Shown: one piece after another, positions 5,910 to 56,841 of the stretch
Layout of the letters: each line of letters begins with the position of its first letter
Numbering within the stretch: the first letter of the stretch is position 1
Assembly: GCA_026770705.1 (NCBI GenBank)
Contig: JANJGN010000071.1
Span: 2,356,001-2,420,000 of the forward strand
Length of the DNA stretch: 64,000 nt
Direction: 5' to 3'
DNA from: Isurus oxyrinchus
Lineage: Eukaryota
Notes under the pieces: model-generated
The model's database searches: none
Seen by the model: the letters and a program-made list of their open reading frames with translations, nothing else
Told to the model about the DNA's origin: nothing
Made by a program: the position numbers and the translations under genes

Positions 5910-6158
5910 TCAGTTTTGCTTGAATCTGATCTGTGCGTATTCTGTCTCCTCTTCCCTGTGGACAGACCCATCACCACTGGGCACCCTGAAGACTTGGGGA
6001 TTGGCGTAGAGAAGGTCGCCGGGTTTGTTGTGATTCCAATGTCCAGCATCGCCTCCCACTGGACCTTCAGAGAGATCCCGGGGAGCTGGGGTCTCCCCCT
6101 CACTAGTTGTGTCTCTGGTTGTGTTCCGGGCCTCAGTAATCAGCACGTTCTGTTTACC
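5910..6158 (-). CDS. Gene A terminal cytoplasmic exon (LLYANP degenerate ITIM; TEYAQI ITSM-like)
   Basis: Acceptor CTGTAG|GGTAAA; 249 nt to TGA, the same length as both gene C tails. Confidence 0.85.
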   Translation of the reverse strand, partial: GKQNVLITEARNTTRDTTSEGETPAPRDLSEGPVGGDAGHWNHNKPGDLLYANPQVFRVPSGDGSVHREEETEYAQIRFKQN

Positions 6159-9100
6159 CTACAGGGAAATGGAAACAGAAGACATCCTCACATCATTTAC
6201 TGGCACTGATAGGGTTAAATTATTGTGCAGCCGCGTTAGGGTCAGTCGTGTCTCAGTTGGTTTAACTCTGTCTCTCATATCATATAAAAGAAACCACCTA
6301 TGACAGGGCAGCACTCCCTCAGTACTGACCCTCCAACAGTGCAGCACTCCCTCAGGACTGACCCTCTGTCAGTCTCGCACTCCCTCGGTAATGTCTCTGG
6401 CGAGTGCCGGCTTGGATTCTGCACTCAGGTGCCTGACGTGAGGCTCATTAACATGAACCTTGTAATCAGAGAGAGGATGAGAGGGAAGAGAAAGAGAGAA
6501 AGAGAGAGATAGGGTGTTATTAATCTATTAATGTATGTAATGTAAGTGGAAATTGTCATTTTAAACAGGGGTTTAGTCTGTGGGTGTGTCTGTGAGAGTT
6601 TTAATTGGATTAAAGCCAGCCAGTCTGGGTACTTTGATGTCAAGTAGTTTTGAGATGTAAACAAAGAGGTAAAGGGGTAATTTGCATTTTTAAACAGAGC
6701 ACTCAATGTCTGAAAGTGAAACCTTAAACGAATCAATGTTTATATTACTAATAATATTGATACGATGAAGGGTGGAGTTCAAAGGTCCTGATGATTCAAT
6801 GAGAATTTACATTCAAAGAGAAGAGCTGGGTATAACTTGAGCAGTTTTGTGTGTGCAGAGCAGAGGCTTGTAACATCAAAGCAGCTGTAAGCCTTCACCT
6901 GTCTGCAAAGGAACCAAAGTGAAAGGAACCTCATTTGGAATTTGTGAGGTGAAAATGCTTTGCTTGGAATCTGCTTAAAGTCTATGGGTTGTCTTAGAGG
7001 AGATTAGTTTGGGAATTTGTTAAAAAGTTATGATAATACTAGTGTTTAGCCATGTGCATATGGTTAACTTGTGTAAATTAATAAATGTCTCATGTAGATT
7101 GATATAAAACCATCTCGAGAACTGGTGGTCTTATTCCTGAATTGAGAGCTGCATCTCAAACATTCCACTGGGAAATATAGGTTATGACAGTTGTTTAAAG
7201 TTTCCCTCTGGGATTTTAAACAACAGCCTTTACCAGTTGCTGTGTCATAACAGAGAGACAGCATGATACTGAACCATTGCTGACTCCACAGGTACAAATC
7301 AGTGGGTAACTGGGCTGGGAATCTGGGACATGTGTTGTCTACACACTGAGATTGAAGCTTTGGAGTGAGTGTAAACAGCTCCTGTACCTGGTGCTTCACA
7401 GAGAGTGGACTGGGGGTCAATGCAATGTCACTGGTCCCTGAAACTCTCTCCTCCATCGCTGTCTTTCTCCTGCAATAACACAATATCACACTGTGGTTAT
7501 CATATAGCAGAGAGTCAGTGCAGCACAGACACAGAGCCCACTGTAACCTTACACCAACGACTGGACTGTCTGTTTAAATCACTTCTGCACAAAGCACAGA
7601 ATCTAGAAGCTTGACACCATCCAGAACAAACCAGCCCGATTGATCAACACCCCATCCACCCCATTAAACATTCACTCCCTCCACCACGAACACACAGTGG
7701 CAGCAGTGTGTGTACCATCTACAAGATGCACTGCAGCAACTCAGCAAGGCTCCTTCGACAGCACCTTCCAAACCCACGACCTCTACCATCTAGAAGGACA
7801 AGGGCAGCAGACACATGGGAACACCACCACCTGGAAGTTCCCCTCCAAGTCACTCACCATCCTGACTTGGAAATATATCACCGTTCCTTCACTGTCGCTG
7901 GGTCAAACTCCTGGAACTCCCTCTCTAACAGCACTGTGGGTGTACCTACACCACATGGACTGCAGCGGGTCAAGAAGGCAGCTCACCACCTCATTCTCAA
8001 GGGGCAATTAGAGATGGGCAATTTAATAACGGCCTCACCAGTGACAGTCACATTCGATGAAAGAATTTAAAATCTCACAGCTCAGGAGGAAGCCACTCAG
8101 CCCATCGTGCCTGTGCTGGCCCTTTGTAAAAACTGTCCAATTAGTCCTAAGCAAATGTTTATATTAAAATCAAGTTAAATCTTCAGACTTACTTTCTCAC
8201 ACAGATGAAGATGAAGATTCCAGCCAGGAAAACACTCAACATGATCCCAGCCGTGAACAATCCTACTGTCCATTTACTGGAGTCTCTACCTGTAAAAACA
8301 GCCATTAATTACTGCACTACAGGTTTACAATGATGCTCCGATGTATCTCAAGAAGCGATACACTCACTCAGTGTTTAAATACTCATTCTCGGGCAATGCT
8401 GACATTTATTGTCCATCCCTAGTTTCCCCTTGAGAAGGTGGTGGGGGGTCTTCCTCCTGAACCACTGGCTTGTCCCAAACTGGGAGACCAGTTCAGAGGG
8501 CAGGTCAGAGTTAACCATGTTGGTGTTTGAGACTGGAGTCACATATACACCCAGACGTGTTAAAATGGACAGGTTTCCCTCCCTTAAGATCATTAGTGAC
8601 CCATATTATATATGTAATTTCTATATATATGTATCAAATAACCTCACTAAAATAATAAATTATCACCTCAATTTCACGCTGTTGTTTGTGGGATCTTGCT
8701 GTGTACAAATCAACGGTTGCGTTTCCTACATGACAACAGTGAGCTCACTTCGAAACTGCTTCATTGGTTATCGAGCGTTTTGGCAATTTCTAAGCATTTT
8801 ATCAACACAAGTCTTGCATTTCGATGTAATCAATCTAACATTTATATATAATATTTATCAATGTGATCCCTATAACATTAATGTATAATATTTAGCAATG
8901 TAATCTATGTAACATTTATATATAATGTTTCTCGATGTAATCTATGTAATATTTATATATAATATTTAGTCGTTTGGGAGGAGAACCTGAGTATTGCTGA
9001 GAAAGGACATTTTGTCAAAGCTTTCTGTCTTGCACCCAATGAAGCAGCTTATCTGGGGGAGAGGGTTCCAGATTTCCACTCCCCTATGTGTGAAGCAGTG

Positions 9101-56700: not shown

Positions 56701-56841
56701 GATGTTGGACATGGGAACCCTGACAAACCCGACGAGCTTTTCTACGCCAACATCAACTTTTCAAAGCTGCCCAGCGGTGACAGGACTGTGCACAGGAGCG
56801 AGGACACGGAATACGCACAGATCAGGTTCCAGAAAAACTGA
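41724..56841 (+). CDS. Siglec-like gene C (L-V-V-C2-C2-C2-TM with two alternative tails); about 690 aa with both V exons
   Basis: Exons 41724-41763, 42626-42994, 45039-45407, 46221-46517, 48902-49177, 50023-50316 and 51275-51371, then 52095-52176 + 53597-53845 or 55058-55139 + 56593-56841; all phase-compatible (2073 nt). Confidence 0.75.
42626..42994 (+). CDS. Gene C V-set exon 1 (VGLS type; YFFR)
   Basis: CTCCTCAG|TTGGAC ... TCTG|GTAAGT; 369 nt open frame. Confidence 0.9.
44220..44790. repeat. 33-bp minisatellite array
   Basis: CAGTGCAGCACTCCCTCAGTACTGACCCTCCGA units; further arrays at 6300, 30995, 53205 and 56335. Confidence 0.9.
45039..45407 (+). CDS. Gene C V-set exon 2 (AEPS type; YFFR), weak acceptor
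   Basis: 369 nt open frame, normal donor; acceptor GGGACACACAG lacks a pyrimidine tract. Confidence 0.6.
46221..46517 (+). CDS. Gene C Siglec domain-2 C2 exon
   Basis: TTAG|ATTTCAC ... CAAT|GTAAGT; 297 nt. Confidence 0.9.
46716..46781 (+). pseudogene. Remnant 3' end of the domain-3 exon in gene C
   Basis: YQCVAENEHGAVEGFITITVE followed by GTGAGT; same breakpoint as the gene A remnant. Confidence 0.8.
47110..48780 (-). mobile_element. Penelope-like retroelement (same insertion as 10745-12410)
   Basis: RT-thumb and GIY-YIG translations at 48116-48670 and 47629-48258. Confidence 0.85.
48902..49177 (+). CDS. Gene C Ig C2 exon
   Basis: CCAG|ATCCCC ... CAAT|GTAAGC; 276 nt. Confidence 0.9.
49535..49710. 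repeat. 37-bp tandem repeat (about 5 copies; about 2 in the gene A paralogue at 9925-9995)
   Basis: GGCTGGAGGAGGTTACAGAGATAGGGAGGGTT..AGG units. Confidence 0.8.
50023..50316 (+). CDS. Gene C membrane-proximal Ig exon (MAG domain-5-like)
   Basis: CAG|ATAAGC ... AAAG|GTGAGA; 294 nt. Confidence 0.85.
51275..51371 (+). CDS. Gene C transmembrane exon, uncharged
   Basis: GRDSSKWTVGLFTAGIMLSVFLAGIFIFICVRK; ACAG|GT ... GAAA|GTAAGT. Confidence 0.85.
51495..51955 (-). mobile_element. LINE 3' fragment (paralogue of 7608-8070)
   Basis: Same ORF2 C-terminal translation. Confidence 0.7.
52095..52176 (+). CDS. Gene C tail 1, cytoplasmic exon 1
   Basis: GCAG|GAGGAAG ... AAG|GTACAG; 82 nt. Confidence 0.8.
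52312..53059 (-). mobile_element. Solo LTR-like element
   Basis: TGTTATG...CATGACA termini; homologous to 6515-7252. Confidence 0.6.
53597..53845 (+). CDS. Gene C tail 1 terminal exon (FLYANP, TELAQI: both Tyr motifs degenerate)
   Basis: CTGTAG|GGTAAA; 249 nt to TGA. Confidence 0.8.
   Translation, partial: GKQNVLITEPRNTTRATTSEGETPAPRGLSEGPVGGDVGHGNPDKPEEFLYANPQVLRMSSGDGSVHREEETELAQIRFEHN
54029..54162. other. Assembly gap
   Basis: Run of N; the flanks correspond to the two sides of the GA/CT microsatellite at 5580-5710 in gene A. Confidence 1.
54460..54920 (-). mobile_element. LINE 3' fragment (duplicated with tail 2)
   Basis: Same as 51495-51955. Confidence 0.7.
55058..55139 (+). CDS. Gene C tail 2, cytoplasmic exon 1
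   Basis: TACAG|GAGAAAG ... CAG|GTACAG; 82 nt; peptide identical to the gene A exon. Confidence 0.75.
55275..56207 (-). mobile_element. Solo LTR-like element with a nested CR1 3' tail (~55707-55880)
   Basis: TGTTAT...ATAACA termini; the insert ends CCTATGTCTTATGGTCTTATGG. Confidence 0.6.
56593..56841 (+). CDS. Gene C tail 2 terminal exon (ITIM LFYANI + ITSM-like TEYAQI)
   Basis: CTGTAG|GGTAAA; 249 nt to TGA; proximal ITIM plus distal TxYxxI, the layout of CD33-related Siglecs. Confidence 0.85.
   Translation, partial: GKQNVLITEPRNTTRDTTSEGETPAPRGLSEGPVGGDVGHGNPDKPDELFYANINFSKLPSGDRTVHRSEDTEYAQIRFQKN

What the first reader, a model, noticed from the sequence alone, without database searches (positions are those of the whole stretch)
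5910..56841. Paired activating/inhibitory Siglec cluster with four signalling ends on shared ectodomain parts
Seen: genes A, B and C share the leader and a near-identical domain-2 exon but end differently. Gene B has an Arg-bearing TM and no Tyr. Gene C tail 2 has ITIM + ITSM-like motifs, gene A has the ITSM-like motif only, and gene C tail 1 has neither. Known: paired Siglecs (human Siglec-5/14, 11/16) are linked to countering sialic-acid-mimicking pathogens. Inference: this is an independently built paired-Siglec system on a five-domain MAG-like scaffold in a probable cartilaginous fish. I know of no description of it but cannot search.
Basis: partly seen in the sequence, partly recalled or inferred. 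Interest (0 to 1): 0.9.

Follow-up and report, generated by a model that had tools for sequence, protein, structure and literature searches.

The report
Shark Siglec cluster, activating and inhibitory
This stretch of a shark genome holds three closely related sialic-acid-sensor (Siglec-type) genes that share their outer parts but end in an "activate", a "hold back", a weaker or a dead signalling end, showing that such paired immune sensors also arose in sharks.

Summary
The window holds three Siglec-like genes: A on the minus strand, B and C on the plus strand. A fourth identical leader belongs to a gene that runs off the left end. All exons have AG/GT borders and compatible phases.

The four ends are as described:
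- Gene B has a transmembrane arginine and a 12-residue tail without tyrosine.
- Gene A has LLYANP (no ITIM) plus TEYAQI.
- Gene C tail 1 has FLYANP and TELAQI, so neither motif.
- Gene C tail 2 has LFYANI (ITIM) plus TEYAQI.

Spliced RNA contigs from four runs join domain 2 directly to the arginine exon.

- The species is a shark; the closest proteins come from lamniform sharks.
- The V domains are Siglec V-sets that keep the key arginine.
- The scaffold is modular, not a fixed five-domain MAG copy.
- Genes A and C carry several V exons in a row.
- Gene B's V domain differs from the others in its binding loops, so the pairing is imperfect.

The same ends occur in RefSeq models of many sharks and rays. 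I found no paper on them. This scan had already found the family on other pieces of this genome. Which V exon goes with which tail, use of tail 2, and the adaptor partner remain untested.

The parts
24352..24391 (-). Gene A leader exon (MIGKSYFLLSLLQ + 1 nt, donor GT)
   Evidence: The sequence is identical to the RNA loose end that precedes a V exon.
22905..23270 (-). Gene A V exon V5, first-position type (VGLSQEW...). The B-strand Cys is replaced by Phe.
   Evidence: Pfam V-set and Ig_CD22.
20732..20909 (.). Assembly gap 1, in non-coding DNA between V5 and V4. Continuity not testable.
19615..19963 (-). V4, a pseudo-exon. It has a 1-nt and a 19-nt deletion; read in phase it stops after 14 codons.
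17582..17950 (-). Gene A V exon V3, second-position type with the extra BC-loop Cys
15545..15913 (-). Gene A V exon V2, second-position type
13666..14034 (-). Gene A V exon V1, second-position type; FRIE arginine present
12998..13294 (-). Gene A domain-2 exon (C2-set, three Cys)
10345..10620 (-). Gene A domain-4 exon (Ig_3/I-set)
9317..9610 (-). Gene A domain-5 exon, like MAG domain 5
8193..8289 (-). Gene A transmembrane exon, uncharged (WTVGLFTAGIMLSVFLAGIFIFICV)
7388..7469 (-). Gene A cytoplasmic exon (RKTAMEERVSGTSDIALTPSPLSVKHQ)
5913..6158 (-). Gene A tail exon: LLYANP (no ITIM) + TEYAQI (ITSM-like), then stop
32030..32069 (+). Gene B leader exon
32773..33147 (+). Gene B V exon, with a divergent block over the B-C to C'-D loops; FRIE arginine kept
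   Evidence: The V>D2 joint is seen in 4 RNA runs.
34007..34303 (+). Gene B domain-2 exon
   Evidence: RNA joints on both sides.
34523..34615 (+). Gene B D3a: an Ig exon shortened to a 31-codon linker (optional)
   Evidence: RNA joints 34301>34521 and 34615>35312; these may partly come from a paralogue.
35312..35593 (+). Gene B D3b Ig exon (optional)
36265..36546 (+). Gene B D3c Ig exon (optional)
38218..38379 (+). Gene B transmembrane exon with Arg (LILGIRAV), a 12-residue tail and a stop at 38355-38357
   Evidence: The D2>this-exon GT..AG joint is seen in 4 RNA runs. Conserved in other sharks.
39097..39450 (+). Gene B 3' untranslated exon (AATAAA at 39434). The end coordinate is approximate.
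41724..41763 (+). Gene C leader exon
42626..42994 (+). Gene C first V exon VC1. It belongs to a B-type front copy that lacks D2 through the Arg-TM exon.
45039..45407 (+). Gene C second V exon VC2, second-position type with the extra Cys. The inverted duplication ends at its acceptor.
   Evidence: A V>V splice is seen in RNA.
46221..46517 (+). Gene C domain-2 exon
48902..49177 (+). Gene C domain-4 exon
50023..50316 (+). Gene C domain-5 exon
   Evidence: The RNA loose end D2>D5 carries gene C's own base, not gene A's.
51275..51371 (+). Gene C transmembrane exon, uncharged
52095..52176 (+). Gene C cytoplasmic exon, copy 1
53597..53842 (+). Gene C tail 1: FLYANP and TELAQI, no tyrosine motif
54029..54162 (.). 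Assembly gap 2, in the 3' flank of tail 1. Colinear with gene A's flank, so no exon is hidden.
55058..55139 (+). Gene C cytoplasmic exon, copy 2 (protein identical to gene A's)
56593..56838 (+). Gene C tail 2: LFYANI (ITIM) + TEYAQI (ITSM-like)

Best explanation
The window is part of a large, recently reshuffled cluster of Siglec-type immune receptor genes in a shark, probably a lamniform.

The three genes are built from a common exon kit: one leader, Siglec V-set exons with the sialic-acid arginine, an almost invariant domain 2, and optional further Ig exons. They end in exchangeable signalling modules.
- Genes A and C are an inverted duplicate pair with an uncharged membrane span and long tails. 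The widespread ITIM+ITSM tail (C tail 2) most likely recruits SHP-type phosphatases and damps cell activation. The ITSM-only tail (A) would do so more weakly. C tail 1 is a decayed copy of the ITSM-only tail.
- Gene B ends in a conserved cassette with an arginine in the membrane and almost no tail. It most likely pairs with an acidic residue of a separate ITAM adaptor chain and activates the cell.

Shown here: the exon anatomy, Siglec identity by sequence, splicing of D2 to the arginine exon, and conservation of the ends in other sharks. Inferred: sialic-acid binding, phosphatase and adaptor recruitment, and opposing function.
For: - Siglec identity. V exons hit Pfam V-set and Ig_CD22. Among solved structures they hit Siglec-5, -8, -7, CD33, Siglec-10, MAG and sialoadhesin at E 1e-14 to 5e-10, with FRIE aligned to FRVE. 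D2 matches domain 2 of MAG and CD33. D5 matches MAG domain 5 alone at 8.5e-12. V and D2 each have the three-cysteine pattern.
- Gene structure. All exons are AG/GT and phase-compatible.
- RNA. Contigs from four runs under two organism labels (two samples, two studies) show GT..AG joints V>D2 and D2>Arg-TM. Loose ends show leader>V, Arg-TM>3' exon, V>V, and D2>D5 with gene C's own base.
- Conservation of the activating end. LILGIRA...KGSRQTV occurs in Scyliorhinus torazame (P0006, P0104, P0158) and Chiloscyllium punctatum (P0025).
- Conservation of the tails. The ITIM+ITSM tail occurs in Cetorhinus, Stegostoma and Hemiscyllium. The ITSM-only tail, with the same Pro, occurs in Carcharodon.
- Real duplication. 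The A/C inverted repeat is 92-97% identical with structural differences.
Against: - No RNA was laid on the tails of A or C, so use of any ITIM-bearing end in this species is not shown.
- The short contigs cannot say which V exon sits on the Arg-TM transcript. Gene B's own V block was covered by one low-depth contig in one run.
- Gene B's binding loops differ from those of A and C, so shared ligands are not implied.
- No adaptor was identified. A 2014 survey found no FcR gamma chain in shark data (PMC4016189).
- V5 lacks a structural cysteine and V4 is broken, so gene A's front end is uncertain, and gap 1 lies inside it.
Confidence: 0.72

Rival explanations
1. Gene B is not an activating receptor. 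The short V-D2-Arg-TM product is a non-signalling decoy, or is retained in the cell, or the arginine serves another partnership, because sharks may lack the matching adaptor.
For: No adaptor was found or searched for in this genome. PMC4016189 reported no FcR gamma homologue in the shark data of 2014. Contigs also run unspliced across the acceptor at 38218 (records 8, 16 and 23), so part of the RNA is not the coding form.
Against: The cassette, including the arginine and the short tail, is conserved across three shark orders. That argues for a constrained function of exactly the activating-receptor type. The spliced joint is present in all four runs.
Confidence: 0.15
2. Part of the apparent gene number comes from the assembly. 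The A/C inverted repeat, the tandem tail modules of gene C, or the tandem V units may be diverged haplotypes or repeat mis-joins, so there may be fewer than four signalling ends at this locus.
For: Two assembly gaps lie inside the cluster: one between the two tail modules, one inside the V array. The copies are 92-97% identical.
Against: The copies differ in structure, not only in letters. A has four tandem V units and C has one. C has two tail modules and A has one. C's front is a B-type copy with a 5.4-kb deletion. The two tails of C belong to two tail lineages that are each conserved in other shark species. Gap 2 is colinear with gene A's flank.
Confidence: 0.1
3. Only one inhibitory end works. 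Gene C tail 1 stops the transcript, so tail 2 is an unused duplicate, or tail 1 is a dead pseudo-exon that is skipped. Gene A may also be crippled by its defective V5 and V4 front. The four ends would then be duplication debris rather than a set of signalling options.
For: Tail 1 has lost the tyrosine (TELAQI). V4 is frameshifted and V5 lacks the B-strand cysteine. Reaching tail 2 requires skipping cyt1 and tail 1, or tail 1 and cyt2. No RNA evidence was obtained for either route.
Against: All tail and cytoplasmic exons keep open frames and AG/GT borders. Tail 1 has only ATTAAA where gene A has AATAAA, which could allow read-through. The gene C body is expressed, as shown by the D2>D5 contig with C's own base.
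Confidence: 0.2

Closest known systems
Human paired Siglecs (Siglec-5/Siglec-14, Siglec-11/Siglec-16)
   Same: Neighbouring genes share an almost identical outer part. One ends in ITIM plus a membrane-distal TxYxx[VI]-type motif. The other has a basic residue in the membrane span and a very short tail.
   Different: - The origin is independent and lies in sharks.
- Identity is complete only in domain 2. The V domain of the activating member differs in its B-C to C'-D loops (41-45% identity there).
- The inhibitory members carry two or more V domains in a row.
- ITSM-only and motif-less tails are added to the set.
- DAP12 association is not shown.
CD33-related Siglec clusters of mammals
   Same: Fast-evolving tandem and inverted duplicates, exon shuffling, and a V-set most similar to Siglec-5, -7, -8 and CD33. 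The tail layout is ITIM followed by a TEY-type motif.
   Different: Orthology was not tested. The membrane-proximal domain is MAG-D5-like. There are tandem V-set exons and arrays of D3-type exons. RefSeq names for the relatives vary between Siglec-5 to -15, CD33-like and MAG-like, so no clear one-to-one relation appears.
Myelin-associated glycoprotein (MAG, Siglec-4)
   Same: V, D2 and especially D5 match MAG domains 1, 2 and 5.
   Different: There is no fixed five-domain body. The D3 exon is a remnant in A and C, and RNA shows V-D2-TM and V-D2-D5 forms. The tails carry immune tyrosine motifs. This is a multigene, polymorphic-looking cluster rather than a single conserved gene.
RefSeq gene models of other elasmobranchs (for example XP_078389734 Cetorhinus, XP_041037179 Carcharodon, XP_072326180 and XP_072325011 Scyliorhinus torazame, XP_072409577 Chiloscyllium)
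   Same: The same leader, V, D2, D5, uncharged TM, both tail lineages and the Arg-TM cassette.
   Different: These are automatic predictions with borrowed mammalian names. I found no study of them. The arrangement in this window (inverted pair, duplicated tail module, five V exons) is specific to this locus.
Multigene activating/inhibitory Ig receptors of fishes (teleost NITR and LITR, skate MDIR) - from my own knowledge, not checked here
   Same: Clusters of Ig receptors with ITIM tails or charged membrane spans in lower vertebrates.
   Different: Those families do not have the Siglec V-set with the sialic-acid arginine.

Membership tests
Siglec family (sialic acid-binding Ig-like lectins) | N-terminal V-set domain most similar to known Siglec V-sets | tested here: met
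   Pfam V-set and Ig_CD22. The top 17 solved-structure matches are all Siglecs, at E 1e-14 to 5e-10. The first non-Siglec match is at 5.6e-8.
Siglec family (sialic acid-binding Ig-like lectins) | Conserved F-strand arginine that binds the sialic-acid carboxylate | tested here: met
   FRIE is present in all eight V exons and aligns with FRVE of Siglec-5.
Siglec family (sialic acid-binding Ig-like lectins) | Three cysteines in the V-set (B-E intrasheet bond plus one for an interdomain bond) and three in domain 2 | tested here: met
   V has GSC, IPC and DCS; D2 has VSC, TTC and LSC. V5 is the exception, with IPF. The bonds themselves are inferred.
Siglec family (sialic acid-binding Ig-like lectins) | Binding of sialylated glycans | not testable with these tools
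   Needs recombinant protein and glycan arrays.
Paired activating/inhibitory receptors of the Siglec-5/14 type | Inhibitory member with ITIM; activating member with a basic residue in the membrane span and a short tail | tested here: met
   LFYANI + TEYAQI in C tail 2. LILGIRAV with a 12-residue tyrosine-free tail in B. The B exon is spliced in RNA.
Paired activating/inhibitory receptors of the Siglec-5/14 type | Near-identical ligand-binding domains in both members | tested here: inconclusive
   The D2 protein is identical (A/B) or differs by one residue (C). The V framework is 89-95% identical, but the loop block only 41-45%.
Paired activating/inhibitory receptors of the Siglec-5/14 type | Homogenisation by gene conversion | tested here: inconclusive
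   The D2 exon is 99% identical against 58-82% for a crude alignment of the flanks, or about 84-88% in their alignable parts. All four A/B differences are silent. This fits strong purifying selection as well as conversion.
Paired activating/inhibitory receptors of the Siglec-5/14 type | Association of the activating member with an ITAM adaptor (DAP12 or similar) | not testable with these tools
   No adaptor sequence was at hand. The literature in the library is silent or negative for sharks.
MAG (Siglec-4) | Fixed body of five Ig domains (V plus four C2) | tested here: not met
   In A and C the D3 exon is a 3' remnant. RNA shows D2>TM and D2>D5. Several V exons lie in tandem.
MAG (Siglec-4) | Membrane-proximal domain of MAG type | tested here: met
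   D5 matches MAG residues 396-480 at E 8.5e-12. The next best match is 7.7e-6.
CD33-related Siglecs | Membrane-proximal ITIM plus membrane-distal TEY-type motif | tested here: met
   C tail 2, and its relatives in Cetorhinus, Stegostoma and Hemiscyllium.
CD33-related Siglecs | Orthology or shared synteny with the tetrapod CD33-related cluster | not tested
   No reference set of mammalian Siglec sequences and no shark chromosome context could be fetched with these tools.

The most novel reading that the evidence does not exclude
Sharks run a combinatorial Siglec system that mammals lack. Lectin heads are built from one to several stacked V-set domains; second-position V exons are marked by an extra cysteine. 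These heads are joined by exon shuffling and alternative splicing to exchangeable signalling cassettes: ITIM+ITSM, ITSM-only, a null tail, and a conserved arginine-membrane cassette. Activating and inhibitory sialic-acid sensors would thus have arisen independently more than 400 million years from the mammalian pairs. This would imply a still unidentified ITAM adaptor partner in cartilaginous fish.
Probability: 0.35. Interest if true: 0.75.

Novelty: new variant of a known kind. Interest (0 to 1): 0.55.

Why it matters
Paired activating and inhibitory Siglecs are usually discussed as a recent, mostly primate answer to pathogens that mimic sialic acid. A shark cluster with the same logic shows that this solution arose independently in the oldest living jawed vertebrates. 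The activating cassette is conserved across shark orders, which supports this.

The cluster gives concrete test objects. These include two V types on opposite signalling ends, a natural ITIM-to-Pro variant, a natural tyrosine-loss tail, and stacked V domains. It also poses a sharp question: which adaptor chain serves a membrane arginine in sharks, where an early survey found no FcR gamma chain.

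Tried and rejected
- A first leader candidate (MRCLHSFPVCLVDTVLG at 32486) was dropped. An RNA loose end pointed to the real leader at 32030.
- The region search for the Arg-TM end with the search for homologous proteins returned only two proteins because of the length window. The other carriers were found by scanning the representatives' sequences.
- A blastp of gene B's divergent V block against the 169 fetched proteins found no close relative; the best was 52%. 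A trans-species origin of that block could not be shown.
- A per-domain tree against mammalian MAG, CD22, Siglec-1, Siglec-15 and CD33-related Siglecs was not built. No tool supplies those reference sequences, and I did not type them from memory. Scores against solved structures stand in for it.
- One PDB search failed on a frame slip and was not repeated.
- Pfam found nothing in the large open frames inside introns and spacers, except a reverse-transcriptase fragment.
- Complex prediction was not used, for lack of an adaptor sequence.
- The reads tools were used once each, on gene B, so the tails of A and C and the DNA continuity were not examined.
- The gaps were not filled or looked up.

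Full report
**What the window is.** The 64-kb window has two N runs, 20732-20909 and 54029-54162. It is full of internal duplication. Stretch 6302-13421 matches 53288-46094 in inverted orientation at 92-97% identity. A unit of about 1.9-2.0 kb is repeated four times head to tail between 13466 and 20645. Stretch 51480-52743 is repeated at 54446-55706.

**Exon content.** Open frames with Ig hallmarks lie on the minus strand on the left and on the plus strand on the right. Gene A therefore runs leftwards, from 24391 to 5913. Genes B and C run rightwards.

**Siglec identity.**
- The V exons hit Pfam V-set and the CD22-type first Ig domain. The next exon hits C2-set_2, and further exons hit Ig_3 and I-set.
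- Against solved structures, a V exon finds Siglec-5, -8, -7, CD33, Siglec-10, MAG and sialoadhesin at E 1e-14 to 5e-10, ahead of any non-Siglec.
- In that alignment its FRIE lies on FRVE of Siglec-5, which is the sialic-acid arginine.
- Domain 2 matches domain 2 of MAG and CD33.
- Domain 4 matches CEA, CD22 d6-d7 and MAG domain 3.
- Domain 5 matches MAG domain 5 alone, at 8.5e-12.
- V and D2 each carry the three cysteines typical of Siglecs.

**Exon maps.** I fixed all borders on the DNA. Every exon has AG and GT, and the phases fit: Ig and TM exons start in phase 1, the cytoplasmic exon in phase 2 and the tail exon in phase 0.
- Leader: 40 nt coding MIGKSYFLLSLLQ plus one base. It occurs four times with identical coding sequence, at 24391(-), 32030(+), 41724(+) and 1506(-). 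The last belongs to a gene that leaves the window on the left.
- Gene A: leader, V5, a broken V4, V3, V2, V1, D2, a D3 remnant, D4, D5, an uncharged TM, a cytoplasmic exon and a tail.
- Gene B: leader, VB, D2, a 31-codon linker exon D3a, D3b, D3c, the arginine TM exon and a 3' untranslated exon at 39097.
- Gene C: leader, VC1, VC2, D2, a D3 remnant, D4, D5, an uncharged TM, then the cytoplasmic-plus-tail module twice.

**The four ends.**
- Gene B: LILGIRAV in the membrane span, then ERQTVKGSRQTV and a stop, with no tyrosine.
- Gene A: LLYANP and TEYAQI.
- Gene C tail 1: FLYANP and TELAQI.
- Gene C tail 2: LFYANI and TEYAQI.

**The gaps.**
- Gap 2 sits 187 bases after the stop of tail 1. Its left flank matches gene A 5912-5727 and its right flank matches gene A 5578-5317. 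About 148 bases of gene A's CT-rich 3' flank correspond to a 156-base span, so no exon is hidden.
- The tandem duplication junction is at 54446. There, homology jumps from gene A 5317 to gene A 8084. The duplicated unit therefore holds the cytoplasmic exon, the tail exon and the poly(A) region, but not the TM exon.
- Gap 1 lies between V5 and V4. The V4 unit continues to 20645, and the DNA right of the gap is unrelated to the unit. Continuity and the number of V units cannot be checked.
- Neither gap touches an exon or a reading frame.

**RNA evidence.** Four runs kept as Logan contigs, under two organism labels (two samples from two studies), were laid on 32400-38399. They carry canonical GT..AG joints, so they are cDNA.
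- Present in all four runs: V>D2 (33147>34007) and D2>arginine exon (34303>38218).
- Also seen: D2>D3a, D2>D3b, D3a>D3b and D3b>D3c.
- One loose end shows the leader sequence in front of a VGLSQEW-type V exon. It is identical to the four leader copies.
- One shows the arginine exon spliced at 38379 to 39097.
- One shows a V exon end joined to an EPSQEW-type V exon start, that is, two V domains in series.
- One shows D2 joined to D5 with the base that distinguishes gene C from gene A.
- One shows a D3-type exon joined to the uncharged TM. This most likely comes from the neighbouring gene with a D3 array to the left of the window (an unchecked note of the scan).

Limits of this evidence: contigs are short, and D2 and the V framework are shared between genes. 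The V domain carried by the arginine transcript is therefore unknown. Gene B's own V block was covered by one low-depth contig in one run. Unspliced contigs also cross the acceptor at 38218. The tails of A and C lay outside the stretch.

**Relatives.** A whole-library search with VC1 found 283 proteins below 1e-10, and many of the top hits contain two to four copies of the V domain. The named ones are RefSeq models of sharks, rays and skates, called Siglec-5 to -15, CD33-like or MAG-like. The closest are from Carcharodon and Cetorhinus, so the window is from a shark, probably a lamniform. These models contain:
- the same leader;
- V-V-TM-ITIM+ITSM (Cetorhinus P0002);
- V-D2-TM with the ITSM-only tail, including the same proline (Carcharodon P0013);
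- full V-D2-D3-D3-D4-D5 forms (Stegostoma P0016);
- the arginine cassette, joined to D2 or to D3, in Scyliorhinus torazame (P0006, P0104, P0158) and Chiloscyllium punctatum (P0025), with LILGIRA invariant.

There are therefore two old tail lineages. Gene C tail 2 belongs to the widespread ITIM+ITSM type. Gene A's tail and gene C tail 1 belong to the ANPQV type, and tail 1 has further lost the tyrosine.

**How paired the pair is.**
- The D2 protein is identical in A and B. The four base differences are silent. The flanking introns are 12-16% different where they can be aligned.
- The V framework of gene B is 89-95% identical to the others. A block from the B-C loop to the C'-D region is only 41-45% identical. 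By alignment to Siglec-5, this block includes the C-C' loop that sets specificity in mammalian Siglecs (my own knowledge).
- I found no close relative of that block among the fetched proteins.
- The two kinds of end thus sit on the same framework but probably not on the same fine specificity.

**Tandem V exons.**
- V4 has a 1-nt and a 19-nt deletion and stops after 14 codons if read in phase. V5 has Phe in place of the B-strand cysteine.
- V1-V4 and VC2 carry an extra cysteine in the B-C loop. V5, VB and VC1, which follow a leader, do not.
- Among the fetched shark and ray proteins, that cysteine is in 0 of 35 first V domains and in 10 of 15 later ones.
- It supports gene models in which a first-type V is followed by second-type V exons.
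- Gene C's front (leader, VC1 and a 99% copy of gene B's last exon) is a B-type gene copy that lacks D2 through the arginine exon. The inverted A-type copy starts exactly at VC2's acceptor.

**Mechanism (inferred).**
- The ITIM+ITSM tail would be phosphorylated and recruit SHP-type phosphatases.
- The ITSM-only tail would do so less efficiently or switchably.
- Tail 1 would be silent.
- The arginine cassette would pair with an acidic residue in an ITAM adaptor.

None of this is shown here. A 2014 survey reported no FcR gamma chain in the shark data then available (PMC4016189), so the partner is an open question.

**Literature and earlier scan notes.**
- Searches for Siglec together with shark, elasmobranch, cartilaginous fish and related terms found no study of shark Siglecs in the held library. 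The whale shark genome paper only lists Siglecs among expanded Ig families.
- The library lacks most subscription journals, so this is not proof of absence.
- This scan had already reported the same family, the arginine cassette and the extra cysteine on other pieces of this genome.

**Constraints kept.** The gaps were left as they are.

**Verdict.** It is overstated on the MAG-like five-domain scaffold and on the strictness of the pairing. Functional opposition remains inferred.

Noticed in passing
window 60554-63996: A 3.4-kb minisatellite of the 12-base unit AGGGGGATGAGG, about 293 copies. It creates a false 1191-codon open frame on the minus strand and is not a gene.
   Followed up: yes
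window 1467-1506 (-), with homology 1191-2100 to the other leader regions: A fourth identical leader exon with its upstream region. It belongs to a further Siglec-like gene that runs off the left end of the window.
   Followed up: partly
window 43536-43900 (+), compared with 39097-39450: A 99% copy of gene B's last (untranslated) exon lies between VC1 and VC2 of gene C. A leader-VC1-to-this-exon splice would be in frame and give a secreted single-V protein with a tail read from former 3' UTR. No RNA evidence was obtained.
   Followed up: partly
window 11261-11890 (+) and 47632-48261 (-): The same 210-codon open frame, Cys/His-rich and with a YIGDTK motif, lies in the intron between the D3 remnant and D4 of both A and C. 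It looks like a transposon relic that was inserted before the inverted duplication. Pfam found nothing.
   Followed up: partly
window 58018-58560 (+): A reverse-transcriptase fragment (Pfam RVT_1, E 3e-8), a retrotransposon relic downstream of gene C.
   Followed up: yes
P0011 (Pristis pectinata, XP_051901316), not in the window: A sawfish relative (V-D2-D5-TM) ends in YQEL-x7-YSEL. That reads as an ITAM in the receptor's own tail, a fifth kind of signalling end in this family.
   Followed up: no
window 39631-40491, 44173-44619, 30925-31278, 25000-27600: Long arrays of a degenerate 33-base repeat (reading ...STDPPTVQHSL...) fill the spacers between the genes and give long false open frames on both strands.
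   Followed up: no
window 37628-38270 (+): RNA contigs run unspliced from at least 37628 across the acceptor of the arginine exon (records 8, 16 and 23). This is either a retained intron or an alternative upstream start. The upstream frame is closed by stops.
   Followed up: no
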